IMG/VR virus record: IMGVR_UViG_3300047320_000285
Span: 1 to 64,000 of that record
Direction: 5' to 3' (one strand)
Length of the DNA: 64,000 nt
Part shown: positions 37,185 through 52,699 of the stretch, piece after piece
How positions within the stretch are numbered: the stretch's first letter is position 1
How the letters are laid out: each line of letters begins with the position of its first letter
Notes under the pieces: model-generated
Told to the model about the DNA's origin: nothing
The model's database searches: none
The model's input: only the letters and a program-made list of their open reading frames with translations
Translations under genes and position numbers: made by a program

Positions 37185-37610
37185 ATGATGAGTAAGATTT
37201 TTTGGCCGAACTATCTGTTCCATGCTGACTTCAGTGCGGATCAGGCCGAGCTGGCAGAGATCCCGCTGGGGGCAGTCAGTGCGGATACGGCGACCTTGCT
37301 GGCGGCGACGCTCTCGACCCATGACACCGGTGAAGGCCGGGCGTTGTGGACCGATCAAGCAGCTAACGCGTGGTCGCTCGAAGGGGTGGAAGTGACGTAC
37401 AACGGTCAGAACAGTTCGCTGTTCCCGACCAAGTATATCCACAACACCGTACTGGGGATTAAGTTCCCGGCGGATTCTGTCACGCCGCCTGCAGGTACGT
37501 TGCTGTATCTGCAGTACGACACGTCGGCTAACCCCCCGACCATTGCGGATCCGGCACCCGAGGAGCCTGCTCCCACGGAACCGACCGACGACTCAACCCC
37601 GCCGGCATAA
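37185..37610 (+). CDS. Tail-fibre family paralog, C-module only, with Pro/acidic tail (141 aa)
   Basis: GRALWTDQAANAWSLEGVEVTYNGQN...GTLLYLQYD resembles the C-module of the 34739 gene. Confidence 0.75.
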   Translation: MMSKIFWPNYLFHADFSADQAELAEIPLGAVSADTATLLAATLSTHDTGEGRALWTDQAANAWSLEGVEVTYNGQNSSLFPTKYIHNTVLGIKFPADSVTPPAGTLLYLQYDTSANPPTIADPAPEEPAPTEPTDDSTPPA

Positions 37611-37686
37611 GTCGATTCTGGGTCACCTTCTCACGAGGGTGACCTGGTATCATCTTTCCCGTGTTTGTTTTTCATTCGAGGTAATC

Positions 37687-40041
37687 ATGGCGATTCACGA
37701 CATGTGGACGTTTGACCACGCGCCGCAGGGTTCGACTGATGTGTCGACCGGTTCAGGTAGTCCGGTATATGCGACCAATACGGGGACGTATTTTCAGTAC
37801 ACGGGCAATCCCGGGTACGTGTATGCCAACGGGATTGCTGGCGCTGCGCAGCTGACCAGTGACGGCTATCTGACCATGAATTCGAGCAGTTCGGCCAACC
37901 CGGGGATGGCGATCAAGGCCAATGAAGTCCAAGACTGGAGCGTGGCCACGCAGTATTGGGTAGGGTTTCGCACCAAGACTTCCAAACAGAATGTCGCGAC
38001 CGCTAACCTCTTTGCGATGTCGGACACCATCGGGATGGCGAATCCGACGGCTATGGTCCAAGAATCGGACATGACCGCTGCCAGCGCCAATACGCTCAAT
38101 ACCGAATATCAGGTCGAAATCTTTATCGACCGAGTGAACCGGACCTTTCAGGTATGGGTGGCCGGGGTCAATGTAAGGAACGGGGTCATTGCAGCCGCCA
38201 GTATTGTGGCCAACGGCAATGGCTTCTATTGGTTTGGTCCGTGGAATAGTGGCACCGCGCCAGGCAGTGCAACGCGTGCGTTCCGGGACTTTTACTGGCT
38301 GGATGTCGATGGTGTCGATACGACCCGCTTGGGTTCGGTCCGCTCGTCGCTGGCGCCGCTGAGCGCGCTGAATGCACCGAACTACACGCTCAATGCTCCG
38401 AGCAACACCGCGCCGGTCTTAAGCGGCAGCGCGACCATTGCGGCGACCCAGACGAAGTTTGGTGCTAATGCCTTGAATAACGGCGCTGGCGGCGCCACTA
38501 ACGGTATCTCGATTCCGAGCATTCCTGCGCTGCAGTTCACCACGGACTTCACGATCGAAATGTGGGCGTATCCAACCACCAACTCGGTCAACATGATTTT
38601 GGCGGGTAAGGGTGCCAAGGCCTTGTTGTGGTATGCCTCGGGGCCGCGTTTGCAGCTGACAATCGATGGTGCCGGCGGTGCGCAGATCAATGCCGCACCC
38701 ACCATCGCGTTGAACACATGGCACCACATCGCGCTGACGCGCCAAGGTAATACGTGGAACATCTGGCTCGACGGGGTCTCGGTCGGTACGTACAGCGGCA
38801 CAGCTGCTGACAGTTGGGGTAACAATACTAACATCCTGTATCTGGCCAACGCACTCGATCAGTCTGGCTGGGGCGTGACTAATCCGGGCTTTGCAGGGTT
38901 CATCGACGAAGTCCGGATTAGTAACATCGCCCGTTATACGACCACTTTTACGCCCGCATCAGCCGCGTTCAGCCCGGACACCAATACGGTGGCGTTGTTG
39001 CATCTGGACTCGAACAGTGGTAGCAATCTAGTGGATTCGAGCGTCAGCGTGGCCACGCCGTTGGCGGCCTTGCAGGCGGCGTATCCGGTGCCGCCGGTAG
39101 TCACCCCGAATGTGATCAGTGCGGTTACCAATGATCCGCTCACCTCGAGCTTCGCCAGTGGCTTGGCCGCGAGCGCGAAGATCATCGCCGTTGATTATCG
39201 GGTCGCTGAGCAAGCATCAATCCCGGGCTCGCTGCTGAATCCCGTACTGAGTGATGGGACGAACAACGTCGCGCTGGCTCAGGTCTTCTCGCCGGTGAGT
39301 GCGATGCAATTCGGTCAACGGTTGGGCTTGCGGCGTGCTGCGCCGGACGGTGGCATTTGGACCCCAGCGAAAGTCTCGGCCGCGTCGTTGGCGTTGACGC
39401 CCGTCCAAGTCAAGACCTTGCTGTTGCTGCACTTCGATGGCACCAACGGCGCGACCACCACCACCGATGCTGCGGGTCTCAATGCGAGTTTGACGATGGC
39501 AGGCGGCAGCACCATCAATACGGCCCAGTCGAAGTTCGGTACCGCGGCGATGTTGAATGGCGGCTCAGCCAATGCTGGGGTCTCGATCCCCGATGGCCCG
39601 ACAGTGCGCTTCACGGCCGGTCTCAGTCTGACCATTGAATGCTGGTGCCGCTCGACCAATAACGGTCAGATCGGGGTACTGTTCGGTAAAGATGCGGGTT
39701 CGCCCTATTCGCACCTGACGTATAACGCCGGTCAGTGGCAGTTCTGGACGGGCGCGACCGGGTCGGCCTCGATCAGCGCGAACTCAGGCGTAGCCGTCAA
39801 TACGTGGATGCATATTGCGCTGGTGTTTAATGGCTCGACATTCTCGCTGTATCAGAACGGCGTGTTGTTGGGTTCAGCCGCAGGCGTGCAATTCGGCTCG
39901 GATAACACCTTGCCGTTTATGGTGGGTAACTACGGCGCGAATGCACCTTGGCAAGGTAATATCGATGAGTTCCGGATCAGTGCCTTGGCGCGCTACACGT
40001 CAGCCTTCACGCCCCCGACTCAGGCATTCGTGCTGGATTAA
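37687..40041 (+). CDS. Tail fibre / receptor-binding protein with two LamG (ConA-like lectin) domains (784 aa)
   Basis: Start at ATG 37687; repeats of TQxKFG...DFTIExW...WHHIA....G..W.I..DG...GFIDEVRIS..ARY...FTP. Confidence 0.85.
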   Translation: MAIHDMWTFDHAPQGSTDVSTGSGSPVYATNTGTYFQYTGNPGYVYANGIAGAAQLTSDGYLTMNSSSSANPGMAIKANEVQDWSVATQYWVGFRTKTSKQNVATANLFAMSDTIGMANPTAMVQESDMTAASANTLNTEYQVEIFIDRVNRTFQVWVAGVNVRNGVIAAASIVANGNGFYWFGPWNSGTAPGSATRAFRDFYWLDVDGVDTTRLGSVRSSLAPLSALNAPNYTLNAPSNTAPVLSGSATIAATQTKFGANALNNGAGGATNGISIPSIPALQFTTDFTIEMWAYPTTNSVNMILAGKGAKALLWYASGPRLQLTIDGAGGAQINAAPTIALNTWHHIALTRQGNTWNIWLDGVSVGTYSGTAADSWGNNTNILYLANALDQSGWGVTNPGFAGFIDEVRISNIARYTTTFTPASAAFSPDTNTVALLHLDSNSGSNLVDSSVSVATPLAALQAAYPVPPVVTPNVISAVTNDPLTSSFASGLAASAKIIAVDYRVAEQASIPGSLLNPVLSDGTNNVALAQVFSPVSAMQFGQRLGLRRAAPDGGIWTPAKVSAASLALTPVQVKTLLLLHFDGTNGATTTTDAAGLNASLTMAGGSTINTAQSKFGTAAMLNGGSANAGVSIPDGPTVRFTAGLSLTIECWCRSTNNGQIGVLFGKDAGSPYSHLTYNAGQWQFWTGATGSASISANSGVAVNTWMHIALVFNGSTFSLYQNGVLLGSAAGVQFGSDNTLPFMVGNYGANAPWQGNIDEFRISALARYTSAFTPPTQAFVLD

Positions 40042-40055
40042 TTAAAGGATGGATC

Positions 40056-42386
40056 ATGCCTATTCACGACATGTGGTCGTACGACGCGGCAGTGCAGGGG
40101 GCCACCGACGTGTCCACTGGTACCAGCCTCGCAGCGTATGTTGAAAACGGCCTGTATAACCAGTACAGCGGTTTGCCGGGCATGTTGTATAAGAACACCA
40201 GCGCTACGGCGGCGCTCGGCGTAGACGGCTTCCTGACGCTGACGGCGGCCGGTACGCTGAACGCCTGCTTGCTGGTGCAAGCCAAGGAGGTGCAGGACTG
40301 GTCGGTCGCTACGCAATACTGGCTGGGGTTCCGCACCAAGACCACCAGTCAGAACGTGGCCACTGCCCACGTGTTCAAGCTGGTTGACGTACCGGGCATG
40401 ACCAACGCGTCGGTGTTTCTGTTGGAGTCGGATTTGACGGCCGCAGGCGCTAACGTTTCCGGGACCGAGTATTACGTCGAGGTCTTTGTCGATCGCGTGA
40501 ATCTCGTCTATCAGGTCTGGGTCAATGGTATCCAGATCAAGAATGGCGCGATCAGCGCGGCCTCGGTGATCGCCAATGGCGGGAGCTACTACGTCTACGG
40601 CGCGACCGGCAGTCCGGCCAACCCGGTCAATGGTAATAACCGGTCGTTTCGGGATTACTATTTCGTCGATGTCGATGCAATCAAGACGCCGGGTCGACTT
40701 GGTTCGGTCCGGTCTTCGCCCCAGATCACTCCGCTCCCGAGTGCGCCGAACAACGGCTCGCTGTATCAGTCCACGATCTCCGCCACGCAGTCGAAGTTCG
40801 GTGGCTCGTCGCTGTCGGTGGGTGCTGCAGCCGCTTCGGTGGTGACGGTACCGGATAGCCCGGCGCTGCGCTTGGGGGTGACGGGAGACTGTACGGTCGA
40901 GTGCTGGGTCTATTACACGGGGGGTGGTACGACACCGGTGGTGTTCGGCAAACAGATCAACAACCTGCCGAACTACGCTCACCTCACGATGAGTAGCGGT
41001 AACTGGGTGTTCTATACGGACAGCGGCGCAGCCGTGATGACGGTAGCCTCCGGCGCGATCACCAATACGTGGGTGCATATCGCTGCGGTCAAACAAGGTA
41101 CGACGTGGACCCTGTATCAGAATGGGGTGGCGCTCGGCTCAGTGAACAATAACGGCACGTTCGGCAATAACAGCGCACCGTTCTTGATTGGTAACTGGGG
41201 TGGTCTCAACTCGCAATGGCTCGGGTTCATCGACGAGTTCCGTATCAGTAACATCGCCCGTTACACCGCAGCCTTTACACCGCCCACGCAGGTCTTTACA
41301 CCGGACGCAAACACACTTGCGCTGTGGCACATGGAGAGCAGTGTTCTGGGGCAGATTCTGGATTCGGTCCCAGCCTTTACACCAACCACTCTGCCCACCT
41401 CGCCCAATGCAGTAGGCTATAGCGCGCAGCTGCTGGGTTCGGCTGGTTTGTCGACTACGCAGGCCAAGTTCGGCACTAGCTCGTTTGTGACCAACGGCGT
41501 GGCGGGCTCGTGCGCGCAGATCCCGGACGCACCGCAGTTGCGCTTGATCAACGACTGGACGATCGAGTTCTTTACGTACAACCCGTCGCCGGCTACGGTA
41601 ATGATGTACCTGAATAAGGGCACCAACGCGTATTTGTTTAACAATGCTGGCACGCTCGGTCTGTCGCTCGATCCGGCGAACTCATTGGTGATCAACGTGG
41701 CGGGTCTTCTGAAAGCTAATCAGTGGCAGCATATCGCGGTCACCAAGCTCGGTCTGAATGTGCAGTTGTGGGTTGACGGAGTATTGGCGGGTTCACTGGT
41801 GGCGGCACTCCCCAACGGCACGTTCGGTAATGTGGCCAGCCCGTATCAGATCGGCATGTGGACCAACAACACCGACGAGATGGTGGGTTTCATGGATGAG
41901 TTGCGCATCAGTAACATCGCCCGTTACATCGCACCGTTCACCCCGCCGACTCAGCAGTTTGTGGTCGACGCCAATACACTGGTACTGATGCACTTTGAGT
42001 CGGTGTTCAATGGCATGCTGGCTGATGATGCCTGCAACGTTGCAGACTTGCTGCAAACGCCTTATCTGGCACCCCCCGGTGTGTTGCCAATGCTGGTAAC
42101 CTCGCCGACTAACGATCCGGTGACTGTGCCGTTGGGTGCACCGACCCCCGGTAAGTTGTTGGCCGTCGATTTCCGGCTGGGGATCAAAGCCAATAATGGG
42201 CCGGCCAGCATGTCGGGACAACTGAATCAAGGCAGCAACAATCAGGCTACCCCTACCCTACAATTGACCGATAACAGTCTGGGCTACGCGCGACGTCTCG
42301 CACTGACGACTGCGGCGCCGGATGGCGGGGCTTGGACACAGGCCAAGATTGGCACCACGTCTTTGGTGCTGACGCCTAATACCTAA
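40056..42386 (+). CDS. Tail fibre / receptor-binding protein with two tandem LamG domains (776 aa)
   Basis: N-terminus paralogous to the 37687 gene (MPIHDMWSYD / QDWSVATQYWLGFRTKT); two LamG repeats. Confidence 0.85.
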   Translation: MPIHDMWSYDAAVQGATDVSTGTSLAAYVENGLYNQYSGLPGMLYKNTSATAALGVDGFLTLTAAGTLNACLLVQAKEVQDWSVATQYWLGFRTKTTSQNVATAHVFKLVDVPGMTNASVFLLESDLTAAGANVSGTEYYVEVFVDRVNLVYQVWVNGIQIKNGAISAASVIANGGSYYVYGATGSPANPVNGNNRSFRDYYFVDVDAIKTPGRLGSVRSSPQITPLPSAPNNGSLYQSTISATQSKFGGSSLSVGAAAASVVTVPDSPALRLGVTGDCTVECWVYYTGGGTTPVVFGKQINNLPNYAHLTMSSGNWVFYTDSGAAVMTVASGAITNTWVHIAAVKQGTTWTLYQNGVALGSVNNNGTFGNNSAPFLIGNWGGLNSQWLGFIDEFRISNIARYTAAFTPPTQVFTPDANTLALWHMESSVLGQILDSVPAFTPTTLPTSPNAVGYSAQLLGSAGLSTTQAKFGTSSFVTNGVAGSCAQIPDAPQLRLINDWTIEFFTYNPSPATVMMYLNKGTNAYLFNNAGTLGLSLDPANSLVINVAGLLKANQWQHIAVTKLGLNVQLWVDGVLAGSLVAALPNGTFGNVASPYQIGMWTNNTDEMVGFMDELRISNIARYIAPFTPPTQQFVVDANTLVLMHFESVFNGMLADDACNVADLLQTPYLAPPGVLPMLVTSPTNDPVTVPLGAPTPGKLLAVDFRLGIKANNGPASMSGQLNQGSNNQATPTLQLTDNSLGYARRLALTTAAPDGGAWTQAKIGTTSLVLTPNT

Positions 42387-42397
42387 GTGAGTGAGCT

Positions 42398-43456
42398 ATG
42401 TCGAAAGCAAAAAACATGTATGCGTTTGACCATATCCCGGTCGGTTCTTCCGCCACCGGCGGGAATGTGCCAACGTATAGCGATTTCCCGTTTGCCTACT
42501 TTAACTCGACGGTCGCTGGCGCGTTAAGTGGTGGTACGGCGGTGGATGCAGGTGGGACGTGGTTGGTCTCCGGCGCCGCTGGCGCAGCCAGTAACTTCTA
42601 CGCGGGCTTCTGGTACTACCCGATGGCGCAGTTCGACCTGAGCAAAGCACGCAGCTGGATTGGTTTTCGTCTGAAGATGATGAGTGCGAATCGCGTCAAT
42701 CCGCCGCTCGCAGTCTGGACGGCGGCTTTCGCCACGCAACCAGCGAACTTGGTGTTGGGTAACGATTACCCATTCGTGACGGGTCAGGAGCACTATGTTG
42801 AGGTGTTGATCGACCGCGTCAATAAGACGCGTACGGTCTGGGTGGACAGTCAGCTGGCGGTGCCAGCCGTGTCGTATGGTTCGTACACGATCCTGAGCAC
42901 GGACCTGTTGAGTTTCGGTACTAACGGTCCGACTGGCGGCTCGACCGCGCAAGCCTACCAGATCAAGGATGTGTACACCGTTGACGATCCGAACGATGGC
43001 TCAGTGACGCGCATGGGGCCGATTATCGCCCGACCGATTACGGAGGCTTCAGCTACCGGAGCCGGTTGGAATGCGTCAACCGGCACGCCTTTGTCAGCAC
43101 TGAATACGCCGGTCAATACCACTACCCCGAGTACGCCGAACGTGGCGTTCGCAGGTGACGGCACGCCGCTGATCGCGACGCTGCAAACGACCGCCGATCC
43201 GGGTGCGGTAGTGCAAGGTGTGCTGTTGATCGGCTCGGGTCAACGTAATCAGGGTACGGGCACGGTGTTTCGTACGACCATCACAGATCAAGCCACCCCC
43301 ACGCCGAATCAACAACAGATCGCCACGTTGTTTCCGGCCGGGTCGTATCAGTACGGTAAGAGCTTGGCGTTCTTGCCCAATGCGTTGGATGGCAGTAACT
43401 GGAGTGCAGCCAAGATTGCGCAGCTGACACTGTCCAATGTAGCCAGCGCGACTTAA
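42398..43456 (+). CDS. Paralog of the 37687/40056 genes lacking LamG domains (352 aa)
   Basis: FDHxP, WIGFR, EHYVEVLIDRVN, KDVY.VD, RMG N-part joined directly to the TPLSALNTP...PDG..W..AKI C-part. Confidence 0.8.
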   Translation: MSKAKNMYAFDHIPVGSSATGGNVPTYSDFPFAYFNSTVAGALSGGTAVDAGGTWLVSGAAGAASNFYAGFWYYPMAQFDLSKARSWIGFRLKMMSANRVNPPLAVWTAAFATQPANLVLGNDYPFVTGQEHYVEVLIDRVNKTRTVWVDSQLAVPAVSYGSYTILSTDLLSFGTNGPTGGSTAQAYQIKDVYTVDDPNDGSVTRMGPIIARPITEASATGAGWNASTGTPLSALNTPVNTTTPSTPNVAFAGDGTPLIATLQTTADPGAVVQGVLLIGSGQRNQGTGTVFRTTITDQATPTPNQQQIATLFPAGSYQYGKSLAFLPNALDGSNWSAAKIAQLTLSNVASAT

Positions 43457-43470
43457 CAAGGGGTCGGTAG

Positions 43471-46353
43471 ATGTCTACAACTTTTCGCAAGACCGCCGCC
43501 GTCACATGGACGAAGGACCCGACTTCCGTTTCCTTGCGAAATGCGAAAGCGGTGGCCTTCGCCAGTGATGTCGGCGGTAACTTGCGTAACTTGCAGGGGT
43601 ATGCGTTCCAGAGTCCGCTACCCGGCGGGAATCTGCGCACTATCCGCGGTTACGCCTTTCAGTCAGTGAAACCGGCCTTGCCCCTCAATGTCACGGGGGA
43701 CTTGGCGCTGTACGCACTGATCAACACCAACAACATCGCACTGAGCCCGTGGTCGGCCAGTAACTCGACGCTGGGTGTACCGAGCGCGTTAGGTACACCG
43801 CTGGCGAGTGGTCAGAATACGCAGGTCAGTCTGACGGCCAAGCAGAGTTCGGGTTACAGTGGGGCGATGACGTTTCAGTACGCCCGTCGTAATCTCGCGG
43901 ATGCTTTTCCGACACCGGTGGCGATTACCGTACCGGGCAGTGCGACGACGATCTACGCGCAGCTGGCGATGATCAACACGAAGTACGCGATGAACCTGAC
44001 GCAGGCGGACGTGGTGGATGGTCCGATTGCAGCAGGTGCCGCCAGCGTAGTACTGACTGCCAAGTCGACCAGCTGGTTGTTTCTGCCGGGCACCACCGCA
44101 ATTGCTGGTAGCCCGCCGACACTGGCCTCAGTGCTCACGGAGCCGAACCTGCCGGGCTTTACCAATGTCGCTGGGGTGGGTCCGGGTTATCCGTACGCGC
44201 AGTCAGTCTTGCAGATGCACTTTGAAGGCTCTGGTGCTGCTCTGGCGGCCGATAGCTTCGGGCATCCGATGACGACTGTGGGTAACGTGGGGGTGAACTC
44301 GACTTTCACGTCCAAGTTTGGCACGGGCTGTAGTGGTTCAACCGGCGTGGGGATTTACTACACGACGGTGGATCGCGGTGATCTGCGTCTGGGCGCAGAC
44401 TTCACGATTGAGTTCTGGATGTATTGTTCCAACGTCACCACGGCCACCGGTACGTTGCTGGCGAAGGGTGCTTCGTTGACCCAAGCGTCGATGCAGTTGG
44501 TGAACGCCAACTTGGTGATCAACTCGGATCAAACTCCCGGTTTGATTAACGTCGCGCACGGCGTTGCCGCTAACACTTTCACGCATATTGCGTTAGTGAA
44601 GGCTGCGGGTGTATGGACGTTGTATGTGGGTGGAGTGGCAAAAGCAACGATTACCAAGACCGATACGTTTGGTGTGAACGCTTCGCCGTTGGTGATTGCC
44701 AACAGCTTCAATGGCGCAGCACCGCCACCGACGTTTATGGACGAACTGCGGATCAGCAATGGTATCGCTCGGTACACGGCTGCCTTCACGCCGTTGACCT
44801 ATGCATTCGGTGACGTATCGACGACGACCTTCGATGGTTTGCCGACGGGTAACGCCCAGTTATTGATGCACTTTGACGGGGCCGATACCAGCACGGTGTT
44901 CAAGGAAGAGAATGGTCGACCGGTGACGAACACGGGTGGTCAGTTGACGACGGCGTTGGCTCAGTTTGGTCCGAGTTCGCTGGCACCGTTGCCGGTCAGC
45001 AGCAACGTCGTGACCCTGCCGTCTGACCACAGTCTCCAGTTGTCGGATAACTGGACGATGGAAGCGTGGGTCAACAACCTCAGTGCAGGTCAGACAGGGG
45101 TGGTGTTCTCGAAGGATAACGGTGCGTCACCGTTCGCCCACCTGACGTATGCGGCGGGTTTCTGGCAGCTGTTCCTCGATGGCGCGGCGGTCGCGATGTC
45201 GGTGGCCGCCAGCACGGTGTTGAACACGTGGATCCATATCGCGGTGGTTAAGCGGCGCGGTACCGTGGCGATTTACCAGAACGGTGTCTCGCTGGGCTCA
45301 CTTGCCGCCGCCAGTACGTTTGGTAACAACAATTCGCCGTTCCAGATTGGTAACTGGGGTGGTCTGGCCAATCCGTTCCAAGGTTACATCGACGAGGTCC
45401 GCGTGAGCAAGGTGGCGCGTTACTTTGGTAACTTCACCCCGCCTACCGCACCGTTTGCATTGGGTGCGGCTGACCGGATGACGCTCACACAAGCCTTCCA
45501 GAATAACGGTATTTTCTGGGTTGCACCGACTAGCGCCACCACGATTCTGGCCCAGCTGGCGACATGGAACACGATGTCTGGTGTACCTTTGAGTGCGACC
45601 GATTTGGCGGATGGTCCGATTGCTGCCAATGCTTCCAGTGTTACGCTGACGGCAGCAGCCACCAGTACCAGTCTGGTGCCGGGTAGTCAGATTACCATCA
45701 CGGCCAAGAACACTGCGTTGCTCATGCATTTCGATGGTACCAGTGGTGCGCAGACGTGGACCGACGAACGCGGGCATGCAATGACGACGTCGGGTGGGAC
45801 AGTTGCCACGTTACAGCTTTCCAACGTGCAGGCGAAGTTTGGTGGTACGTCGTTCCTCAGTACGGGCGCAGGCGCAATCATCACCCCGTCAGCGCCGGAG
45901 CTTATGTTGGGGGTCACCACGGACTTCACCATTGAGTTCTTCTTTAACATGATCGGTGTCGTGGCTGGTCAGGTGATGTACGAGAAGGGCAACTCAGGCG
46001 CGCGGGTGCAGTACAACGCCGGTAAGCTGTATGTGTATTCCGACCAGTCAGCGAATACGGACGGGGGTCAGTTGCTGACCGTGGCAGCGAGCTTTATCAA
46101 GACGGCTCAATGGCAGCACATCGCCATCGTCAAGTTCAACGGTACGTGGACTGCGTATGTGGATGGGGTGGCGCAAGTCAGTGTCAGTGCACCGACGCAG
46201 ACCTTCGGCAATAACACCAACAACGTGATTATTGGTAACTACTTCAACGGTGCAAACCCGCAGAACGGTTACATGGACGAACTGCGGGTGAGTAACGTCG
46301 CACGTTATACGGCTGGCTTTACGCCGCCCACGGCGCCATTCGTGCTGGATTAA
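43471..46353 (+). CDS. Tail fibre / receptor-binding protein: family N-module + three LamG domains (960 aa)
   Basis: GQNTQVSLTA...GYSGAMTFQYARRNL module; three MHFxG...KFG...DELRxS..ARY..FTP repeats. Confidence 0.85.
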   Translation: MSTTFRKTAAVTWTKDPTSVSLRNAKAVAFASDVGGNLRNLQGYAFQSPLPGGNLRTIRGYAFQSVKPALPLNVTGDLALYALINTNNIALSPWSASNSTLGVPSALGTPLASGQNTQVSLTAKQSSGYSGAMTFQYARRNLADAFPTPVAITVPGSATTIYAQLAMINTKYAMNLTQADVVDGPIAAGAASVVLTAKSTSWLFLPGTTAIAGSPPTLASVLTEPNLPGFTNVAGVGPGYPYAQSVLQMHFEGSGAALAADSFGHPMTTVGNVGVNSTFTSKFGTGCSGSTGVGIYYTTVDRGDLRLGADFTIEFWMYCSNVTTATGTLLAKGASLTQASMQLVNANLVINSDQTPGLINVAHGVAANTFTHIALVKAAGVWTLYVGGVAKATITKTDTFGVNASPLVIANSFNGAAPPPTFMDELRISNGIARYTAAFTPLTYAFGDVSTTTFDGLPTGNAQLLMHFDGADTSTVFKEENGRPVTNTGGQLTTALAQFGPSSLAPLPVSSNVVTLPSDHSLQLSDNWTMEAWVNNLSAGQTGVVFSKDNGASPFAHLTYAAGFWQLFLDGAAVAMSVAASTVLNTWIHIAVVKRRGTVAIYQNGVSLGSLAAASTFGNNNSPFQIGNWGGLANPFQGYIDEVRVSKVARYFGNFTPPTAPFALGAADRMTLTQAFQNNGIFWVAPTSATTILAQLATWNTMSGVPLSATDLADGPIAANASSVTLTAAATSTSLVPGSQITITAKNTALLMHFDGTSGAQTWTDERGHAMTTSGGTVATLQLSNVQAKFGGTSFLSTGAGAIITPSAPELMLGVTTDFTIEFFFNMIGVVAGQVMYEKGNSGARVQYNAGKLYVYSDQSANTDGGQLLTVAASFIKTAQWQHIAIVKFNGTWTAYVDGVAQVSVSAPTQTFGNNTNNVIIGNYFNGANPQNGYMDELRVSNVARYTAGFTPPTAPFVLD

Positions 46354-47962: not shown

Positions 47963-48020
47963 TACACTGTACTTGATCCCGTTATCAAGTCATTTACACT
48001 TCCTTTATACTCGTAGGAGC

Positions 48021-48356
48021 ATGACCATGAATACCCAACGTATCGCAGCTTGCCTGAACACCATTCCGAGCACGCTGCCGGAGCTGAAAGCCACTCACGC
48101 CACGCTGCGTGAACTGATTGGCGAAATCGCGCAGCAGTACGCTGACCTGCGCAAGATGCCCGAAGGCTTGATACCGATGTTCGCTGAGGCACTGCAGTTT
48201 CTTGCGACCACCACGGTGTCGCTGGAATCCATCGGCGAGAAGCCGTCCATGCCGACTGGCATCGCATGGTTCGAAGACCTGCTCAATGAGCGCCGCCGGG
48301 TGCTCGCCCTGATTGAAGTTGCTGAGCTGCGCTCGCAAGGCGTCCTTTTCCACTAA
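48021..48356 (+). CDS. Hypothetical early protein, helical (111 aa)
   Basis: RBS TAGGAG. Confidence 0.75.
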   Translation: MTMNTQRIAACLNTIPSTLPELKATHATLRELIGEIAQQYADLRKMPEGLIPMFAEALQFLATTTVSLESIGEKPSMPTGIAWFEDLLNERRRVLALIEVAELRSQGVLFH

Positions 48357-48368
48357 GAGAACAAGAAC

Positions 48369-48728
48369 ATGAAAAGCCGTTTCAAACAAATTCTGCAAGA
48401 CCTCGCGGGCGCACTGGCGATTTGTGTGACCCTGCTTGCCGGCACCGCCGTCAAAGCGCATGCGAACGAAGTCACGGTACTGCCCAAGATGATTGGTTGT
48501 ACCGCCGATGGTTACTACCGGGTGTTTGGCGTGCAAGGCCAGCCCGGCGATGTACTGTATCAGCAACAGATTCGCGGCCAGTGGTACCAGTGGACCGACA
48601 TCGACCTCTATAACAACCTGCCGCATGTGCGCAAGGAAGACGTCGATGGGACCACGTATCGCTGCGACCAGTCGGTGTGTTTCACGGCAGACGGTTATGT
48701 GATTGGCGCTGCCCCGCTGGAGCATTGA
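48369..48728 (+). CDS. Putative secreted/periplasmic early protein (119 aa)
   Basis: Signal-peptide-like LAGALAICVTLLAGTAVKAHA|N; three further Cys; internal repeat CTADGY / CFTADGY. Confidence 0.7.
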   Translation: MKSRFKQILQDLAGALAICVTLLAGTAVKAHANEVTVLPKMIGCTADGYYRVFGVQGQPGDVLYQQQIRGQWYQWTDIDLYNNLPHVRKEDVDGTTYRCDQSVCFTADGYVIGAAPLEH

Positions 48729-48758
48729 GTTTTTGTAGGTGTTGGTAAATGCGACTTA

Positions 48759-48789
48759 GCCCGCCGGGGCAACTCGGCGGGTTCTTTTT
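48759..48789 (+). terminator. Intrinsic terminator
   Basis: gcccgccggg-gcaa-ctcggcgggt-tcttttt. Confidence 0.75.
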
Positions 48790-48867
48790 GGCGCAGTAAA
48801 ATCTCACGCGCTTGCTTCACTTTGTGTGATAGCAAGCCGCCTTACACTTCCTTATACTGAGGTTATC

Positions 48868-49008
48868 ATGTCCAAGCAACTGAAGAAGAAGATTCGTGAT
48901 TTCGTGATCGTGACCGTGGTGTTGGTTGGTGGCGGTCTGTCGTTGGTGGCAGTCGGTACGTACGGCGATTACGCCCGTCACGATCGTGCTGCTCACCATC
49001 AAGAGTAA
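48868..49008 (+). CDS. Small single-TM protein (46 aa)
   Basis: MSKQLKKKIRDFVIVTVVLVGGGLSLVAVG...; RBS GAGG. Confidence 0.65.
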   Translation: MSKQLKKKIRDFVIVTVVLVGGGLSLVAVGTYGDYARHDRAAHHQE

Positions 49009-49072
49009 GTGTGGTAGAGTTGTATCCGTCGCAAGCAGTTCTTCTTAACAGCAACTACAAGGAGTCATTCAA

Positions 49073-49450
49073 ATGACCCAAGCCGTCGCAAGCAACACCC
49101 GCGTTACCGTTGAAGCTGCAGGTGCCGCCTATATGGACCTGTTCAGCAACCCGTTCCTGCAAGCCTTTCGGGGCAAGGATAACTACGTTGATCTGCCGCT
49201 GATCTACGATCAGAAGGACATCCTCGAGAAGCTGGTTAAGCCCGAGCTGATGGCCACCATCAAACACGCGCTCGAGACGTTGAACAACTTCCTGTTCGAC
49301 AACGAGCACGCGAACTTCAACCCGAAGGCCGCAGAAGAACTCAAACTACGCTACGGTGTGATGGGTGAGCTGGTCAAGGACCTGCGCTACTATCACGGTA
49401 GCGAGATGTACGTTATCACGACCGCCAATGGCAAGTACGTGATCGGTTAA
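49073..49450 (+). CDS. Hypothetical early protein (125 aa)
   Basis: RBS AAGGAG, strong codon bias. Confidence 0.8.
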   Translation: MTQAVASNTRVTVEAAGAAYMDLFSNPFLQAFRGKDNYVDLPLIYDQKDILEKLVKPELMATIKHALETLNNFLFDNEHANFNPKAAEELKLRYGVMGELVKDLRYYHGSEMYVITTANGKYVIG

Positions 49451-49487
49451 ACCTACAGGGGGCCTTCGGGTCCCTTAGGAGTACGCC

Positions 49488-49622
49488 ATGAAAGGCATGC
49501 TTCTCATTTTCGCTCTGGTGGCCACCTACTGTTTGCCGATGATCGGCATTCCGTTGTGGATCATCTGGGCACTGGTGAAGTTTCGTAAGCCCATAGCGAA
49601 ACTGATCCAAGTGCTGGCGTAA
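49488..49622 (+). CDS. Small membrane protein (44 aa), absent from the ORF track
   Basis: RBS TAGGAG; MKGMLLIFALVATYCLPMIGIPLWIIWALVKFRKPIAKLIQVLA. Confidence 0.65.
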   Translation: MKGMLLIFALVATYCLPMIGIPLWIIWALVKFRKPIAKLIQVLA

Positions 49623-49677
49623 GCGTCAGCTTTCATACTGCAGTATTGTCACACTACTTAAACAAGGAAGAAAAATC

Positions 49678-50157
49678 ATGTTCGGTCGCAAACAAGCTAA
49701 AATCGATGGTCTGAAGATGGCGTTCTACACGGACGCCGCCGCAGATGGTTCGCATGGCAAGATCCTCGTGACGAGTCGGCGTCGCGGTCTGGAGCGTGAA
49801 GTCGTGAACTTCGTGTTCGTCGGCATGACGGCCCCGCCCGCGCTCACGCCGGCCCTGATGGAACACATCTGGACGGAAGCGAAAGCGCAAGGCTTCGTGC
49901 CGTTCGAAATCGTCGGGGCATTGGAAGTCAACGCTGCGCCCTCAAAGGAAAACGCTCAGACCGTGATTCTGGCCGGCGCACCATTACCGGCCGTGCTCGC
50001 GCCTGCAGCCACGTCGGAGGCGCTTAACCTGCAGGAACTCGGTCGTACCCCGGTGCAGTACAGCGACCCGTCGCATCCGTTGGATCCGGCACGCTTCGAG
50101 CGCACCGAAGTCCCGGCCTTCCTGCGCAAGGAAGCCGGTCAACTGGCTACCGCGTAA
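49678..50157 (+). CDS. Early protein with an FtsZ C-terminal-peptide-like tail; candidate division inhibitor (159 aa)
   Basis: RBS AAGGAAG; ends ...RFERTEVPAFLRKEAGQLATA after an Ala/Pro-rich linker. CDS well supported, function inferred. Confidence 0.75.
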   Translation: MFGRKQAKIDGLKMAFYTDAAADGSHGKILVTSRRRGLEREVVNFVFVGMTAPPALTPALMEHIWTEAKAQGFVPFEIVGALEVNAAPSKENAQTVILAGAPLPAVLAPAATSEALNLQELGRTPVQYSDPSHPLDPARFERTEVPAFLRKEAGQLATA

Positions 50158-50166
50158 GGGGTGGTG

Positions 50167-50388
50167 ATGAAACACGTCAGCCTGTTGCTGGCGGCTCTCG
50201 TGGTCAACGCTCCGGCGCTGGCTTACGTGAATGTCGGCAAAGCCAAGATTGACCGTCAGATTAGCAGTCAGGATCTGAATGTGGATCTTATCGAACTGAG
50301 CGATGGTTCGAAATGCGTGCTCGTCCGTGATCCGATCGAGCGTACCATGCAACTGTCATGCGCGGTCAATCCCACCCCGATGAAATAA
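50167..50388 (+). CDS. Putative secreted small protein (73 aa)
   Basis: Signal peptide MKHVSLLLAALVVNAPALA|Y; Cys pair. Confidence 0.7.
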   Translation: MKHVSLLLAALVVNAPALAYVNVGKAKIDRQISSQDLNVDLIELSDGSKCVLVRDPIERTMQLSCAVNPTPMK

Positions 50389-50398
50389 GGAGGCAGCG

Positions 50399-50902
50399 AT
50401 GCTGAGTATAGCAACCAAGCAACGCATCGCTCGCAACCGCAAGTTGCGAGCTAACCCGAAGTGGGTGCAAAAGGTGGAGATGTATATCCATCACCTGAAG
50501 ACCACCTCCATCAGTAGCTCGGCGGTGTTGTCGACCAAGCATCTACTGGATCCGGCCCAACAAGCTGCGGCTGAGGCTGATCTGAACGCCCGCTGGGCTA
50601 AGCTCAATGCGCAGGTCGCATCACTGGCGTTGATTTCGCGGGCCGAGTGGTACGAACTCGAGCAGACCTTGCCGATCGAACACCGCTGGACCCCGCACCA
50701 GATGAAACGCACCATCAAGGCCTGCGGCGGGTATCGGGCGGTCATCGAAGCGCATGGTGGCTACCGCAACAAGATCGCGCCCAAGTCGGTGTTCGCTAAC
50801 CAAGCGAGCGTGCCGATGGGGAATTGGGATAATCCAGCCACGCTTGACGACTGGATGAACAAGGGCGACGAGTGGGAAGCCGAACACGGAGATCCGCAAT
50901 GA
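50399..50902 (+). CDS. Hypothetical protein (167 aa)
   Basis: RBS AGGAGG. Confidence 0.75.
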   Translation: MLSIATKQRIARNRKLRANPKWVQKVEMYIHHLKTTSISSSAVLSTKHLLDPAQQAAAEADLNARWAKLNAQVASLALISRAEWYELEQTLPIEHRWTPHQMKRTIKACGGYRAVIEAHGGYRNKIAPKSVFANQASVPMGNWDNPATLDDWMNKGDEWEAEHGDPQ

Positions 50903-51243
50903 GCCAATCCCTGTTGGGTGAACTCGCCGACAACCTGATCGACGCGTTGTTTCTCGGCATGCGGGACCACACGGTGCAGATCGGTCACGTGCCCGGTATG
51001 CGCCCGGAGCATTCACATGGCGTGATCCATGCAATGAATGCGCAGGGCCGCACCGAGCATATCGGCTTCGTGGCGCAGAACCCGAAGAAGCTCACGCGCC
51101 CGCATCCGGAGTCCATCGCCAGCCTGTTCAAGCAGGCCCGGGTGCTGGGCTTCGACCCCAAACAGATCGAGCTGCGGGTCGGTAAGTACCGCCGTGTGTA
51201 TGAAGAACACAAGCTCGAGCCCGTCTACGTACAACCGCTGTAA
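50899..51243 (+). CDS. Hypothetical protein (114 aa)
   Basis: ATGA overlap with the upstream stop. Confidence 0.75.
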   Translation: MSQSLLGELADNLIDALFLGMRDHTVQIGHVPGMRPEHSHGVIHAMNAQGRTEHIGFVAQNPKKLTRPHPESIASLFKQARVLGFDPKQIELRVGKYRRVYEEHKLEPVYVQPL

Positions 51244-51268
51244 TACTTCCCTACAAGGAGTAGTAACC

Positions 51269-51661
51269 ATGCCGCAGAATCTCGAAGTCAAGGGTATCTT
51301 CAAGGACCCGATCATCCAGCAGAACGTCGCGATGCTCACGCTGGCGATCAAGAACCTCGCCCTCGCGGGGATCAAGGTCGAAGGCACGGCTGATGATGGC
51401 TGGCACAAATTCGAACTGATGCACATCGGCGAGCAGCTGATCAACGGCAAGTGCAACTCGTTCGTTGACGGCACTGTCAATGACGAAGACGCCGCTGCTG
51501 ACCTCGAACTCGAAATCTACGCGAGCGAGCGCATCGAAGTCGCCCCGCCCGATTACATCACCGAAGAAGTCGATCCGAATTTCAACAAGCTGCGCCCGAC
51601 GGTCGCCGAACTCGAGCAGCGTGGTGTGCTCGTCAACGTCGCGGGCTTCGGCCAGATCTAA
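51269..51661 (+). CDS. Acidic hypothetical protein (130 aa)
   Basis: RBS AAGGAG, strong codon bias. Confidence 0.8.
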   Translation: MPQNLEVKGIFKDPIIQQNVAMLTLAIKNLALAGIKVEGTADDGWHKFELMHIGEQLINGKCNSFVDGTVNDEDAAADLELEIYASERIEVAPPDYITEEVDPNFNKLRPTVAELEQRGVLVNVAGFGQI

Positions 51662-51698
51662 GTTTTTGTTGTGACACGGCTTGGCGCGTTTTGCGCCG

Positions 51699-51729
51699 GG
51701 GGCTTCCTAGTGGAGCCTCTTTTTTTTTT
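51699..51729 (+). terminator. Intrinsic terminator
   Basis: ggggcttcc-tagt-ggagcctc followed by a long T run. Confidence 0.8.
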
Positions 51730-51760
51730 GTACGTACTGTGCCATCTGGTGTAGGCTGGT

Positions 51761-51785
51761 CTAATTGATTTCAACAACATATTAC
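51761..51785 (+). promoter_or_regulatory. Early promoter (TTTC-N5-CATATTAC)
   Basis: ctaattgaTTTCaacaaCATATTAC, nearly identical to 8190-8214. Confidence 0.7.
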
Positions 51786-51868
51786 CTACTTGGATGCGCA
51801 TTCGCAAGTCCGTAGGTAGGGAGGTCCTTGACTCCTGTTTCCAATCGTTCTTATACGCAGAGAACATC

Positions 51869-52699
51869 ATGCAAGCAGATCAACTAACAACCTACCTTCC
51901 GTTCATTGAACTGATGGATGAGGTTGAAACCACCAAGGTACTGTGGGCGCTGACGATTCTTTTGATCGGGGCGCTCATTCGTATCTACTTTCTGAATACT
52001 CGCGTCAGAAAGCTTGAGGGGAGCGAGCCGGAACCTACGGCCACGGGGTGGGTCCGTCCGACCCGCCGGGTGATCCTCGACGTGCCCAACCGTACCATGC
52101 GCGCGGCTATTCATGGCAAGCGCAGTTATCCGAATCAGGCGTTGTGCGAAATCTGTCCGTGGAGTACGGAGAACCTCGCCGCGCTGAGCATGTACATGCG
52201 CCAGTCGGTGAGCATCGGAGAGATTGCTTTACAACGCCGGATTGCCACCGTCTCGGCGATTGTCCACGACTTTGCTATCCCGGCCGAGATGATGTTGCTC
52301 GACGAGGAAGCGTTGACGATGTATCTGGATTACCGTAATCGCGTCAGCCCGGCATTAGGCAGTCTCGAGCTGATGCAGTATGCGCACGTCGGGTGTGACG
52401 AAGACGTGGATGAAGCGCATCTGACTCAGCTGTTGCGGCTCACCGTGCCGGTGACGGGGTGGCTGCTGAAATTTGCTGAGAAAGAAGCCTGGCCGGTGTT
52501 TGACATGTTCTACCGGGACCTGCGTTCGGCCGGGGTGATTACCACGCTTGACCGGGCAGATCTTAAAAGCATCATCACGGCGTACAGTGCGTATTCGAAA
52601 ATGCTCGTGCCAAGCGAGTACATTCTGAATAACGCCACCGCATTTTACATCTATCGTCGCATCAGCACGATGGAGTTGTTTGAGCCAATCGAGCAATAA
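51869..52699 (+). CDS. Membrane-anchored hypothetical protein (276 aa)
   Basis: TM segment VLWALTILLIGALIRIYFL near the N-terminus; start at ATG 51869. Confidence 0.7.
   Translation: MQADQLTTYLPFIELMDEVETTKVLWALTILLIGALIRIYFLNTRVRKLEGSEPEPTATGWVRPTRRVILDVPNRTMRAAIHGKRSYPNQALCEICPWSTENLAALSMYMRQSVSIGEIALQRRIATVSAIVHDFAIPAEMMLLDEEALTMYLDYRNRVSPALGSLELMQYAHVGCDEDVDEAHLTQLLRLTVPVTGWLLKFAEKEAWPVFDMFYRDLRSAGVITTLDRADLKSIITAYSAYSKMLVPSEYILNNATAFYIYRRISTMELFEPIEQ

What the first reader, a model, noticed from the sequence alone, without database searches (positions are those of the whole stretch)
49678..50157. Phage early protein carrying an FtsZ C-terminal-peptide mimic (EVPAFLRK)
Seen: the 159-aa protein has an ~85-aa folded N-domain, an Ala/Pro-rich linker and then R-T-E-V-P-A-F-L-R-K-E-A-G (EVPAFLRK at 50107-50130), 8 residues from the stop. 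Established: the conserved FtsZ C-terminal peptide (E. coli DYLDIPAFLRKQAD) follows a disordered linker and is the docking site for FtsA, ZipA, ZapD, MinC, SlmA and ClpX. Six residues (PAFLRK) are identical and the two before are conservative (E/D, V/I). The domain-linker-peptide layout copies FtsZ itself. Inference: this is a decoy that titrates FtsA/ZipA to block septation and enlarge the cell for the phage nucleus, or a hook that recruits the N-domain to the divisome. The known phage division inhibitors I recall (lambda Kil, T7 gp0.4) are not peptide mimics of this kind.
Basis: partly seen in the sequence, partly recalled or inferred. Interest (0 to 1): 0.85.

Follow-up and report, generated by a model that had tools for sequence, protein, structure and literature searches.

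The report
Jumbo-phage protein mimicking the FtsZ tail
A jumbo bacteriophage encodes a small protein whose flexible tail ends in a conserved copy of the peptide that the bacterial division protein FtsZ uses to dock onto its membrane anchors, so the phage probably interferes with or hijacks host cell division by a mimicry mechanism I could not find described for phages.

Summary
ORF 49678-50157 (+) encodes 159 aa: a folded N-domain, a disordered linker of about 55 aa, then E-V-P-A-F-L-R-K eight residues before the stop.

All 11 metagenomic homologs and Burkholderia phage FLC9 gp303 keep [ED][VI]P[ATS]FLR[KS], with P, F, L and R invariant and synonymous codon changes, while the linker is unalignable and varies in length. 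Most homologs carry EIPAFLRKQ, nine residues identical to the FtsZ terminus I recovered from at least 116 mostly Burkholderiales genomes. Residues equivalent to E. coli I374, F377 and L378, critical for FtsA/ZipA/MinC/SlmA binding, are retained.

The N-domain (phrog_19581) is a phage-private fold of unknown function with 203 cluster representatives. The motif occurs in several of its clades. Unrelated phage families also end in FtsZ-like tails; one 67-aa family ends in ...FLRKQAD*.

Binding, division block, early expression and any link to the phage nucleus are untested. I found no prior report of this mechanism. Best reading: a mimic that engages FtsA/ZipA, either as a decoy that blocks division or as a hook to the divisome.

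The parts
49664..49670 (+). Shine-Dalgarno-like sequence aaggaag, 7 nt upstream of the ATG
   Evidence: Read directly from the sequence
49678..50157 (+). Complete ORF, 159 aa plus stop: the FtsZ-tail-mimic protein
   Evidence: Full-length homologs at 50-72% identity on jumbo-phage contigs of about 250 kb
49678..49938 (+). N-terminal folded domain (residues 1-87; beta-beta-beta-alpha-beta core at residues 13-79), family phrog_19581, function unknown
   Evidence: PHROG E=1.1e-15. AF2 pLDDT 88.9, pTM 0.78. 203 cluster representatives in a 1.84-billion-protein library. No PDB fold or sequence match
49939..50103 (+). Intrinsically disordered Ala/Pro-rich linker (residues 88-142)
   Evidence: pLDDT below 50 for residues 91-135. 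Mean column entropy 1.79 bits against 0.57 in the N-domain; length varies 44-95 aa among most motif carriers
50026..50046 (+). Second short conserved island in the linker, N-L-Q-E-L-G-R (residues 117-123), partner unknown
   Evidence: Kept in P0002-P0004 and P0012 and present after the motif in L160
50107..50130 (+). FtsZ C-terminal-peptide-like motif E-V-P-A-F-L-R-K (residues 144-151)
   Evidence: P146, F148, L149 and R150 invariant and K151 in 12 of 13 homologs; entropy 0.51 bits. Synonymous codon variation. Matches [DE]IPAFLRKQAD* of at least 116 FtsZ genes
50131..50154 (+). Variable 8-residue C-terminal extension after the motif (E-A-G-Q-L-A-T-A), the counterpart of the FtsZ C-terminal variable region
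   Evidence: Entropy 1.68 bits. Six or eight residues long in 11 of 12 members of the window clade (16 in P0012)
48758..48783 (+). Terminator-like hairpin (11-bp stem, T-run) upstream; possible 5' boundary of the transcription unit
   Evidence: Consensus scan only; the count in the region is not above chance
51698..51720 (+). Terminator-like hairpin followed by T10; possible 3' boundary of a six-ORF unit (49073-51661)
49488..49622 (+). Upstream 44-aa hydrophobic (single TM-like) ORF, a syntenic neighbour
   Evidence: Hydropathy. A 44-aa gene sits immediately upstream of the homolog in L005, L006, L007 and L008

Best explanation
The gene encodes a phage effector that mimics the conserved C-terminal peptide (CTP) of host FtsZ. 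A phage-private folded N-domain carries a disordered linker of about 55 residues that ends in [ED][VI]P[ATS]FLRK. This peptide occupies the CTP-binding pockets of the host proteins that normally hold FtsZ filaments at the membrane: FtsA subdomain 2B and the ZipA C-terminal domain. By competing with FtsZ for these tethers it weakens or prevents Z-ring attachment, so the infected cell stops dividing. Because a single CTP binds weakly, effective competition needs high copy number or an oligomeric N-domain. Shown here: the motif, its position after a disordered linker, its selective conservation at the protein level, its identity to the FtsZ terminus of Burkholderiales, and its recurrence in other clades and families. 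Inferred: binding to FtsA/ZipA, competition with FtsZ, and the division block.
For: (1) The motif is conserved in all 11 metagenomic homologs and in FLC9 gp303, despite an unalignable, length-variable linker. Entropy is 0.51 bits in the motif against 1.79 in the linker and 1.68 after the motif. (2) Synonymous codon changes across the motif show selection on the peptide. (3) The majority form EIPAFLRKQ equals 9 consecutive residues of the commonest FtsZ end, GMDEIEIPAFLRKQAD*. Among 120 genomes, mostly Burkholderiales, 116 of the ORFs found are FtsZ by BLASTP. The cultured relatives infect Burkholderia and Ralstonia. (4) The A/T/S variation at the position after P includes Thr, the residue at that position in Bacillus subtilis FtsZ as I recall it (own knowledge, not checked here). 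(5) Equivalents of I374, F377 and L378 are kept. Those residues are critical for ZipA, FtsA, MinC and SlmA binding (PMC4117426; PMC10769210). (6) Free tail peptide binds its partners and competes with FtsZ in vitro. Over-expressed FtsZ 354-383 fragments inhibit E. coli growth in vivo. (7) B. cenocepacia uses FtsA and ZipA as FtsZ tethers (PMC7761207). (8) The spacer between domain and motif (44-95 aa in most carriers) is in the range of FtsZ's own disordered tail: 60-101 aa in the recovered FtsZs, 67 in E. coli. (9) The motif is the commonest recurrent hexamer in the tails of the N-domain family and sits in several clades. Unrelated phage families also end in FtsZ-like tails.
Against: There is no binding or phenotype data. 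The monomeric CTP binds weakly (Kd 20 uM for ZipA, 50 uM for FtsA, 81 uM for SlmA) and FtsZ polymers bind with avidity, so a simple monovalent decoy would need very high expression; the oligomeric state of the N-domain is unknown. The N-domain is more conserved than a passive carrier needs to be, and about 85-90% of family representatives lack the motif. This suggests the N-domain has its own activity, which fits a hook model at least as well. In eight representatives the motif is internal, followed by about 90-180 residues. The Ralstonia phage orthologs lack the motif, although the related genus Cupriavidus has the same FtsZ end. The host of this uncultured phage is unknown.
Confidence: 0.5

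Rival explanations
1. Hook or adaptor. The tail is a localisation signal that docks the protein onto FtsA/ZipA at the membrane or divisome. The conserved N-domain then performs its own, unknown job there, for example acting on FtsZ filaments or tethering a phage structure at mid-cell. Titration of the tethers is not the point, and division need not be blocked by competition alone.
For: The N-domain is highly conserved (entropy 0.57 bits). It forms a large family whose members mostly lack the motif and carry other tails, including other recurrent short motifs. The motif has been gained or lost at least 5 times on the N-domain tree. In the long forms it lies between two domains. The weak monovalent affinity of the CTP suits transient localisation better than stoichiometric titration. 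From my own knowledge, not checked here: phage phi29 p1 associates with the FtsZ ring to promote replication.
Against: No activity can be assigned to the N-domain: no Pfam, PDB-sequence or PDB-fold match. The independent 67-aa family has barely any domain beyond the tail, which fits a decoy better. Nothing in the window links the protein to a phage structure.
Confidence: 0.27
2. The tail targets a non-tether partner of the FtsZ CTP. It could saturate MinC/SlmA/ZapD, or it could engage ClpX, either as a degron that times the protein's own turnover or as a competitor that protects other substrates.
For: The same peptide is recognised by MinC, SlmA, ZapD and ClpX in E. coli (PMC4117426). A degron review lists the peptide (PMC8138137). 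The residues after the motif differ from FtsZ's QAD*, and that region modulates ZapD binding in E. coli (title and abstract of PMC4835091).
Against: The best-conserved positions are those used by FtsA and ZipA. SlmA is few in number and may be absent from the host. Neutralising division inhibitors has no obvious benefit for a lytic jumbo phage. ClpX recognition of FtsZ also needs a linker element that is not seen here.
Confidence: 0.1
3. The resemblance to FtsZ is coincidental. The conserved peptide binds a phage-encoded or unrelated host partner.
For: There is no experimental link. Short motifs can converge. A looser P[AG]F[LM][KR] ending in a basic context occurs in a large unrelated phage family and could have another role.
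Against: Chance expectation in the window is about 0.002-0.004. Nine of nine residues are identical to the local FtsZ terminus. The placement after a disordered linker of FtsZ-like length is the same. An independent family copies even the terminal KQAD*.
Confidence: 0.06

Closest known systems
The FtsZ conserved C-terminal peptide (CTP/CCTP) itself, E. coli DYLDIPAFLRKQAD
   Same: Same core sequence, the same key hydrophobic residues (I/V, F, L), the same position at the end of an intrinsically disordered linker of similar length, and a short variable extension after it.
   Different: It is attached to an unrelated 85-aa phage-private domain instead of the tubulin-like GTPase domain. There is no Tubulin/FtsZ Pfam hit and no BLASTP hit to FtsZ. 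The extension is 6-19 residues in the short forms and does not end in QAD*.
Phage division inhibitors lambda Kil and T7 Gp0.4
   Same: Small phage-encoded proteins that stop host cytokinesis by acting on the FtsZ system. Kil's action depends on ZipA (PMC3961180, PMC11323111).
   Different: Kil (predicted helix-turn-helix, PMC11762379) and Gp0.4 act on FtsZ and its assembly. The protein here carries FtsZ's own docking peptide, so it should bind FtsZ's partners, not FtsZ. There is no sequence relationship: the only family hit is phrog_19581.
Experimental FtsZ tail fragments and peptides used as competitors
   Same: [quoted passage not shown] Over-expressed FtsZ 354-383 fragments are dominant-negative in E. 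coli (PMC10769210). The phage protein looks like a natural version of these reagents.
   Different: It is natural, is fused to a conserved domain, and its effect is untested. Avidity was important for engineered constructs according to Du, Park and Lutkenhaus 2015, which I know only from its title as cited; the paper was not held.
MinC and SlmA, host antagonists with a two-pronged mechanism
   Same: Both exploit the CTP-receptor interaction to control Z-ring assembly.
   Different: The polarity is reversed. MinC and SlmA bind the CTP, whereas the phage protein presents one.
Short-linear-motif mimicry by eukaryotic viruses (general concept, own knowledge)
   Same: A short host docking motif is copied into a disordered region of a viral protein, with convergent acquisition in unrelated proteins.
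   Different: This is a bacterial virus and a bacterial cytoskeletal motif. I found no report of this for phages in the library searched.

Membership tests
FtsZ C-terminal peptide motif class (functional mimic, not homolog) | Core consensus [DE]-[IVL]-P-[ATS]-F-L-R-[KR] | tested here: met
   EVPAFLRK in the window. P, F, L and R are invariant in 13 homologs. The same core is found in at least 116 FtsZ ends and in E. coli.
FtsZ C-terminal peptide motif class (functional mimic, not homolog) | Lies at or near the C-terminus after an intrinsically disordered linker | tested here: met
   pLDDT is below 50 for residues 91-135. The motif is 8 residues from the end. Spacers of 44-95 aa compare with FtsZ tails of 60-101 aa. 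In eight distant family representatives the motif is internal.
FtsZ C-terminal peptide motif class (functional mimic, not homolog) | Retains the residues needed for partner binding (E. coli I374, F377, L378) | tested here: met
   V/I145, F148 and L149 are conserved. Their roles are taken from PMC4117426 and PMC10769210.
FtsZ C-terminal peptide motif class (functional mimic, not homolog) | Physically binds FtsA, ZipA or other CTP receptors | not testable with these tools
   No multimer prediction or experiment is available. The structure tool takes single chains only.
FtsZ/tubulin family (homolog of FtsZ, PhuZ or TubZ) | Tubulin-like GTPase domain | tested here: not met
   No Pfam family at E<=0.01. 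The fold is a 4-stranded beta-beta-beta-alpha-beta domain of about 75 aa. It is not a member.
phrog_19581 / N-domain family of Burkholderia- and Ralstonia-type jumbo phages | Profile match over the domain of about 85 aa | tested here: met
   E=1.1e-15 over residues 11-96. tblastn hits to FLC1-1B, FLC4-3B, RP12, RP31 and FLC9. BFVD fold hits to RP12 (2e-7) and RSF1 (6e-4). 203 representatives.
Known phage division inhibitors (lambda Kil, T7 Gp0.4) | Sequence or profile similarity to those proteins | tested here: not met
   Pfam and PHROG scans return only phrog_19581, of unknown function. The mechanisms described for Kil and Gp0.4 target FtsZ assembly.
RNase H-like fold (lead from ESM Atlas neighbours) | Significant structural or profile match, and the catalytic acidic residues | tested here: not met
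   The Atlas gives TM 0.48-0.55 to RuvC, transposase and terminase fragments only. Foldseek against PDB with a confident model gives a best E of 0.72 and TM<=0.35. There are no Pfam or PDB-sequence hits for 60 members.
Chimalliviridae-type (phiKZ-like, nucleus-forming) phage context | phiKZ-type multisubunit RNAP and virion proteins; chimallin | tested here: inconclusive
   An RNAP beta-subunit piece (phrog_2962, 3e-131), phiKZ_IP internal head protein and phiKZ-like virion proteins are present. No chimallin or PhuZ was recognised in these 64 kb of a 253.7-kb contig.

The most novel reading that the evidence does not exclude
Mimicry of the FtsZ docking peptide is a convergent, widespread phage strategy. 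At least three unrelated phage protein families have independently acquired CTP-like peptides in disordered tails: the jumbo-phage N-domain family, in several of its clades; a 67-aa family ending in FLRKQAD*; and possibly the basic-tailed L158 family and the charged KKSD[IV]PAFLRK family. The jumbo-phage N-domain would then be a modular scaffold that displays interchangeable short host-targeting motifs, a bacterial-virus counterpart of the short-linear-motif mimicry known from eukaryotic viruses. In nucleus-forming phages the tail may couple infection to the host division site or to cell length.
Probability: 0.35. Interest if true: 0.9.

Novelty: new variant of a known kind. Interest (0 to 1): 0.78.

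Why it matters
Phage proteins that stop host division are known, but those described act on FtsZ polymerisation. A protein that instead presents FtsZ's own docking peptide would be a new mechanism: competitive mimicry of a bacterial short linear motif.

It would give a natural, evolution-optimised ligand for the CTP pockets of FtsA and ZipA, which are sought-after antibacterial targets. It would also provide a genetic handle on why large phages manipulate host cell length or the division site.

The motif recurs in several clades and in unrelated families, which suggests a general strategy that a simple motif search can mine. The hypothesis is directly testable with a cultured phage-host pair (FLC9 and Burkholderia glumae) and with standard E. 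coli division assays.

Tried and rejected
- **Nucleotide search:** megablast of 48000-52000 against 50,697 phage records found no match, so the phage has no close cultured relative at the DNA level.
- **Neighbouring genes:** Pfam on the protein and 9 neighbours found nothing for the protein or its small neighbours. PHROGs on the neighbours found nothing.
- **N-domain fold:** Foldseek against PDB with the full-length model (best E 0.74) and with a confident N-domain model (best E 0.72) gave no match.
- **N-domain sequence:** a profile of 60 N-domains against PDB sequences gave nothing below E 0.2. A Pfam scan of all 60 members gave only noise.
- **RNase H-like lead:** the ESM Atlas neighbours were considered and rejected for lack of support.
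- **Window paralogs:** none found for the N-domain.
- **Promoters and terminators:** promoter-like sites are not above chance, so expression timing cannot be inferred.
- **Excluded sequences:** I dropped those rows and did not resend them.
- **Paper not held:** Du, Park and Lutkenhaus 2015 (PMC4364296) was not in the library, so multivalency is cited only through papers that cite it.
- **Chance DNA matches:** L130 (FLSK, internal) and the short frames in L140, L161, L162, L164, L172, L180 and L183 are chance or non-genic. L131 is a real FtsZ 3' end at a contig edge.
- **Other motif carriers:** the KKSD[IV]PAFLRK proteins have no informative Pfam, PHROG or Atlas hit.

Full report
**1. The observation**

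The ORF at 49678-50157 (+) starts with ATG, is preceded by aaggaag (49664-49670), and encodes 159 residues ending ...LDPARFERTEVPAFLRKEAGQLATA*. E144-K151 is nt 50107-50130, with eight residues between the motif and the stop. I read the E. coli K-12 ftsZ gene from RefSeq; its product ends KEPDYLDIPAFLRKQAD*.

No other match, even to the loose pattern P.F[LM]R[KR], exists in the six-frame translation of the window. The chance expectation is 0.004 for exact PAFLRK and 0.002 for the eight-residue class.

AlphaFold2 with 12 homologs gives a folded beta-beta-beta-alpha-beta domain (residues about 12-85, pLDDT 72-89), a disordered stretch (91-135, pLDDT below 50), and low-to-moderate confidence over the motif. 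A 60-sequence alignment raises the N-domain model to pLDDT 88.9 and pTM 0.78. The domain-linker-peptide layout is real.

**2. Where it comes from**

The window is the first 64 kb of IMG/VR contig UViG_3300047320_000285, which is 253,740 bp long. It encodes:
- a phiKZ-type RNA polymerase beta-subunit piece (3927-5279, phrog_2962, 3e-131);
- phiKZ-like internal head proteins (PF12699);
- a series of Laminin_G_3/DUF7941 virion proteins;
- a thymidylate kinase.

There is no nucleotide-level relative among 50,697 phage records. The protein's N-domain hits the Ralstonia jumbo phages RP12, RP31, FLC1-1B and FLC4-3B and Burkholderia phage FLC9, in the same gene neighbourhood. The host is therefore most likely a member of the Burkholderiales; this is an inference.

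**3. The decisive test: is the tail conserved?**

A search of 5.8 billion proteins found 11 full-length homologs at 50-72% identity. Several lie on contigs of about 250 kb with the same gene order. I aligned these with the FLC9, FLC1-1B and RP31 proteins.
- All 12 members of the window clade, plus FLC9 gp303, keep [ED][VI]P[ATS]FLR[KS].
- P146, F148, L149 and R150 are invariant, and K151 is present in 12 of 13.
- FLC9 gp303 shares only about 28-32% identity in its N-domain and has an unalignable linker, yet reads ...ALEVPTFLRKEAQ....
- Mean column entropy is 0.57 bits in the N-domain, 1.79 in the linker, 0.51 in the motif and 1.68 after it. The linker also varies in length.
- The codons of the motif vary synonymously (E GAA/GAG, V GTC/GTG/GTA/GTT, P CCG/CCT, R CGC/CGT, K AAG/AAA). 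Selection therefore acts on the peptide, not on a DNA element.

**4. Match to the likely host's FtsZ**

I scanned one genome per species (GTDB) for DNA encoding IPAFLRKQAD with high-GC codons. Most are Burkholderiales, including Paraburkholderia, Caballeronia, Trinickia, Cupriavidus, Massilia, Bordetella and Rubrivivax.

Of the ORFs found, 116 of 120 are FtsZ by BLASTP against E. coli FtsZ, and every one ends [DE]IPAFLRKQAD*. The commonest end is GMDEIEIPAFLRKQAD. The majority phage form, AEIPAFLRKQT, shares nine consecutive residues with this.

These FtsZs have 60-101 residues after the globular domain (median 84; E. coli has 67). The phage proteins have 44-95 residues between N-domain and motif in most carriers, so the geometry is also copied.

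**5. What the motif does in FtsZ (literature)**

- The tail DYLDIPAFLRKQAD binds FtsA, ZipA, MinC, ZapD, ClpX and SlmA.
- The free 14-mer binds with Kd of about 20 uM (ZipA), 50 uM (FtsA) and 81 uM (SlmA), and competes with FtsZ.
- E. coli has roughly 5000 FtsZ, 1000 FtsA and 3500 ZipA molecules per cell (all from PMC4117426).
- F377 and L378 are key ZipA contacts, and over-expressed fragments covering FtsZ 354-383 are inhibitory in vivo (PMC10769210).
- FtsA binds the CTP through subdomain 2B, with very transient residence of a single peptide (PMC9098913).
- In Burkholderia cenocepacia, FtsA and ZipA were shown to tether FtsZ polymers (PMC7761207).

The phage peptide keeps the equivalents of I374 (V or I), F377 and L378.

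**6. The N-domain**

It matches only phrog_19581, of unknown function. A profile search of 1.84 billion cluster representatives found 203 relatives at E<=1e-3, ranging from 61 to 428 aa. No function could be assigned:
- no Pfam hit for 60 members;
- no PDB sequence hit;
- no PDB fold match even with the confident model;
- BFVD returns only the RP12 ortholog and a 98-aa RSF1 protein.

Atlas neighbours hinted at an RNase H-like half-fold, but nothing else supports that.

Among 150 representatives, 15 carry a clear FtsZ-type motif, and a few more carry degenerate versions. On a tree built from the N-domain only, motif presence needs 8 changes, of which at least 5 are forced by well-supported branches; 0 of 500 label shuffles gave as few. 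Several distinct clades therefore carry the motif, and gain cannot be told from loss.

In eight representatives and in L160 the motif is internal, followed by about 90-180 residues. In a reduced alphabet the PAFLRK-type hexamer is by far the commonest recurrent element in the family's tails: 15 representatives against 5 for the next. Other islands recur as well:
- NLQELGR, at window residues 117-123;
- G[FH]x[ST]AGF[DE], in FLC9 and several representatives.

The Ralstonia phage orthologs end ...KVDNVAALAPAQ and have no CTP-like motif.

**7. Other phage proteins with the same device**

A scan of IMG/VR for DNA encoding [DE][IV]PAFLRK gave 57 loci, which I classified.
- **Homologs of our protein:** besides the window contig, two FLC9-like homologs (L146, L157) and L160.
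- **L173-type family:** a 67-aa ORF in a 40-kb contig (L173) ends ...PLDIPAFLRKQAD*. Its nine-member family all ends RKQAD*, and seven of nine end FLRKQAD*. It is unrelated to the jumbo-phage protein.
- **L158-type family:** a larger family with more than 140 members. 55 of the 120 listed end in RGE[VL]P[AG]F[LM][KR] plus a basic tail. This is a looser match whose meaning is uncertain.
- **KKSD[IV]PAFLRK family:** about 23 low-GC contigs encode highly charged proteins of 410-770 aa with an internal EEVKKSD[IV]PAFLRK[AM]RGDKPL block and no informative family hit.
- **Others:** L131 is a genuine FtsZ 3' end at a contig edge, and a few hits are chance.

**8. Mechanism**

The best-supported statement is that the tail binds the host receptors of the FtsZ CTP. 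I put that at about 0.75-0.8 in total.

Within it I favour competition with FtsZ for FtsA/ZipA, leading to loss of Z-ring anchoring and a block of division (0.5). The reasons are that free tails are known to compete and to be toxic, and that the independent 67-aa family is little more than a tail.

The main rival is a hook that localises an active N-domain to the divisome or membrane (0.27). It is favoured by the strong conservation and wide distribution of the N-domain without the motif, and by the weak monovalent affinity of the CTP. The two readings are not exclusive.

Minor rivals are targeting of ClpX/MinC/SlmA/ZapD (0.1) and coincidence (0.06).

**9. Novelty**

- Full-text searches for PAFLRK returned seven papers, all on FtsZ itself.
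- Searches combining phage, FtsZ, mimicry, FtsA/ZipA and jumbo phages found no phage protein described as an FtsZ-tail mimic.
- A 2026 review of jumbo phage biology contains neither "FtsZ" nor "cell division". It does note that PhuZ-driven nucleus centring depends on host cell length (PMC13282480).
- The known phage inhibitors Kil and Gp0.4 act on FtsZ assembly.

The library is incomplete, so an existing report cannot be excluded. I classify the finding as a new variant of a known kind: phage effectors of host division, acting by a mechanism not previously described.

**10. Limits**

Everything about binding, phenotype, timing and oligomeric state is inferred. The host is unknown. The census of other families came from one restricted DNA pattern and is not exhaustive.

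Noticed in passing
L173:7368-7568 (-); family P0162-P0170: An unrelated 67-68-aa phage protein family whose members all end in RKQAD*. Seven of nine end in FLRKQAD* and the query ends in DIPAFLRKQAD*, which is the literal extreme C-terminus of proteobacterial FtsZ. It lies in a 40-kb, 64% GC viral contig next to a DNA methyltransferase-like gene.
   Followed up: partly
L158:3782-4204 (-), L165; family P0171-P0290: A large family of about 120-145-aa proteins (more than 140 members). 55 of the 120 listed end in ...ERKxRGE[VL]P[AG]F[LM][KR] plus a short basic tail. The ending is CTP-like but looser, and its function is unknown.
   Followed up: partly
L133:448-1686 (-), L155:3570-5852 (-), L148, L182, L166 and about 18 more loci: Highly charged, low-complexity proteins of 410-770 aa in low-GC (35-38%) viral contigs. 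They share an internal block EEVKKSD[IV]PAFLRK[AM]RGDKPLT.DVKSG.KDSISHKDN. Pfam, PHROG and Atlas give no informative hit.
   Followed up: partly
window 50026-50046 (residues 117-123); L160; FLC9 gp303 (L003:2989-3513); P0015, P0018, P0028, P0041, P0083, P0113: Two further short conserved islands occur in the disordered tails of the N-domain family. NLQELGR is found in the window clade and, after the motif, in L160. G[FH]x[ST]AGF[DE] is found with or without the PAFLRK motif. This suggests the tails carry several interchangeable short motifs with unknown partners.
   Followed up: no
L001:2968-3369, L002:2965-3372 (Ralstonia phages FLC1-1B, RP31; also RP12, FLC4-3B): The syntenic orthologs in Ralstonia jumbo phages have the N-domain and a short tail ending KVDNVAALAPAQ, with no FtsZ-like motif. 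The related genus Cupriavidus nevertheless has the same FtsZ terminus. The reason for the difference is unknown.
   Followed up: partly
L131:1-69 (IMGVR_UViG_3300019776_001116): A genuine FtsZ 3' end (...GMEDFEIPAFLRKQAD*) sits at the very edge of a 43.6-kb 'viral' contig. This indicates host flanking DNA, so the contig is a prophage or a mis-binned sequence.
   Followed up: no
window 49488-49622 and 50161-50388: The mimic gene is flanked by a 44-aa hydrophobic ORF and a 75-aa ORF with a signal-peptide-like N-terminus. The 44-aa ORF is conserved in size and position in L005-L008. The group lies between two terminator-like hairpins (48758-48783, 51698-51720).
   Followed up: partly
L161, L162, L164, L172, L183: Five contigs share a very short open frame ending ...IFR.[FL]D[IV]PAFLRK(2 aa)*. 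It is too short to be a gene of this kind, and may be the off-frame or antisense reading of some conserved element.
   Followed up: no
window 37543-46353: Three consecutive large paralogous virion proteins (832, 776 and 960 aa) have repeated Laminin_G_3 domains. They are followed by three small DUF7941-type ORFs, an arrangement conserved in L005 and L008.
   Followed up: no
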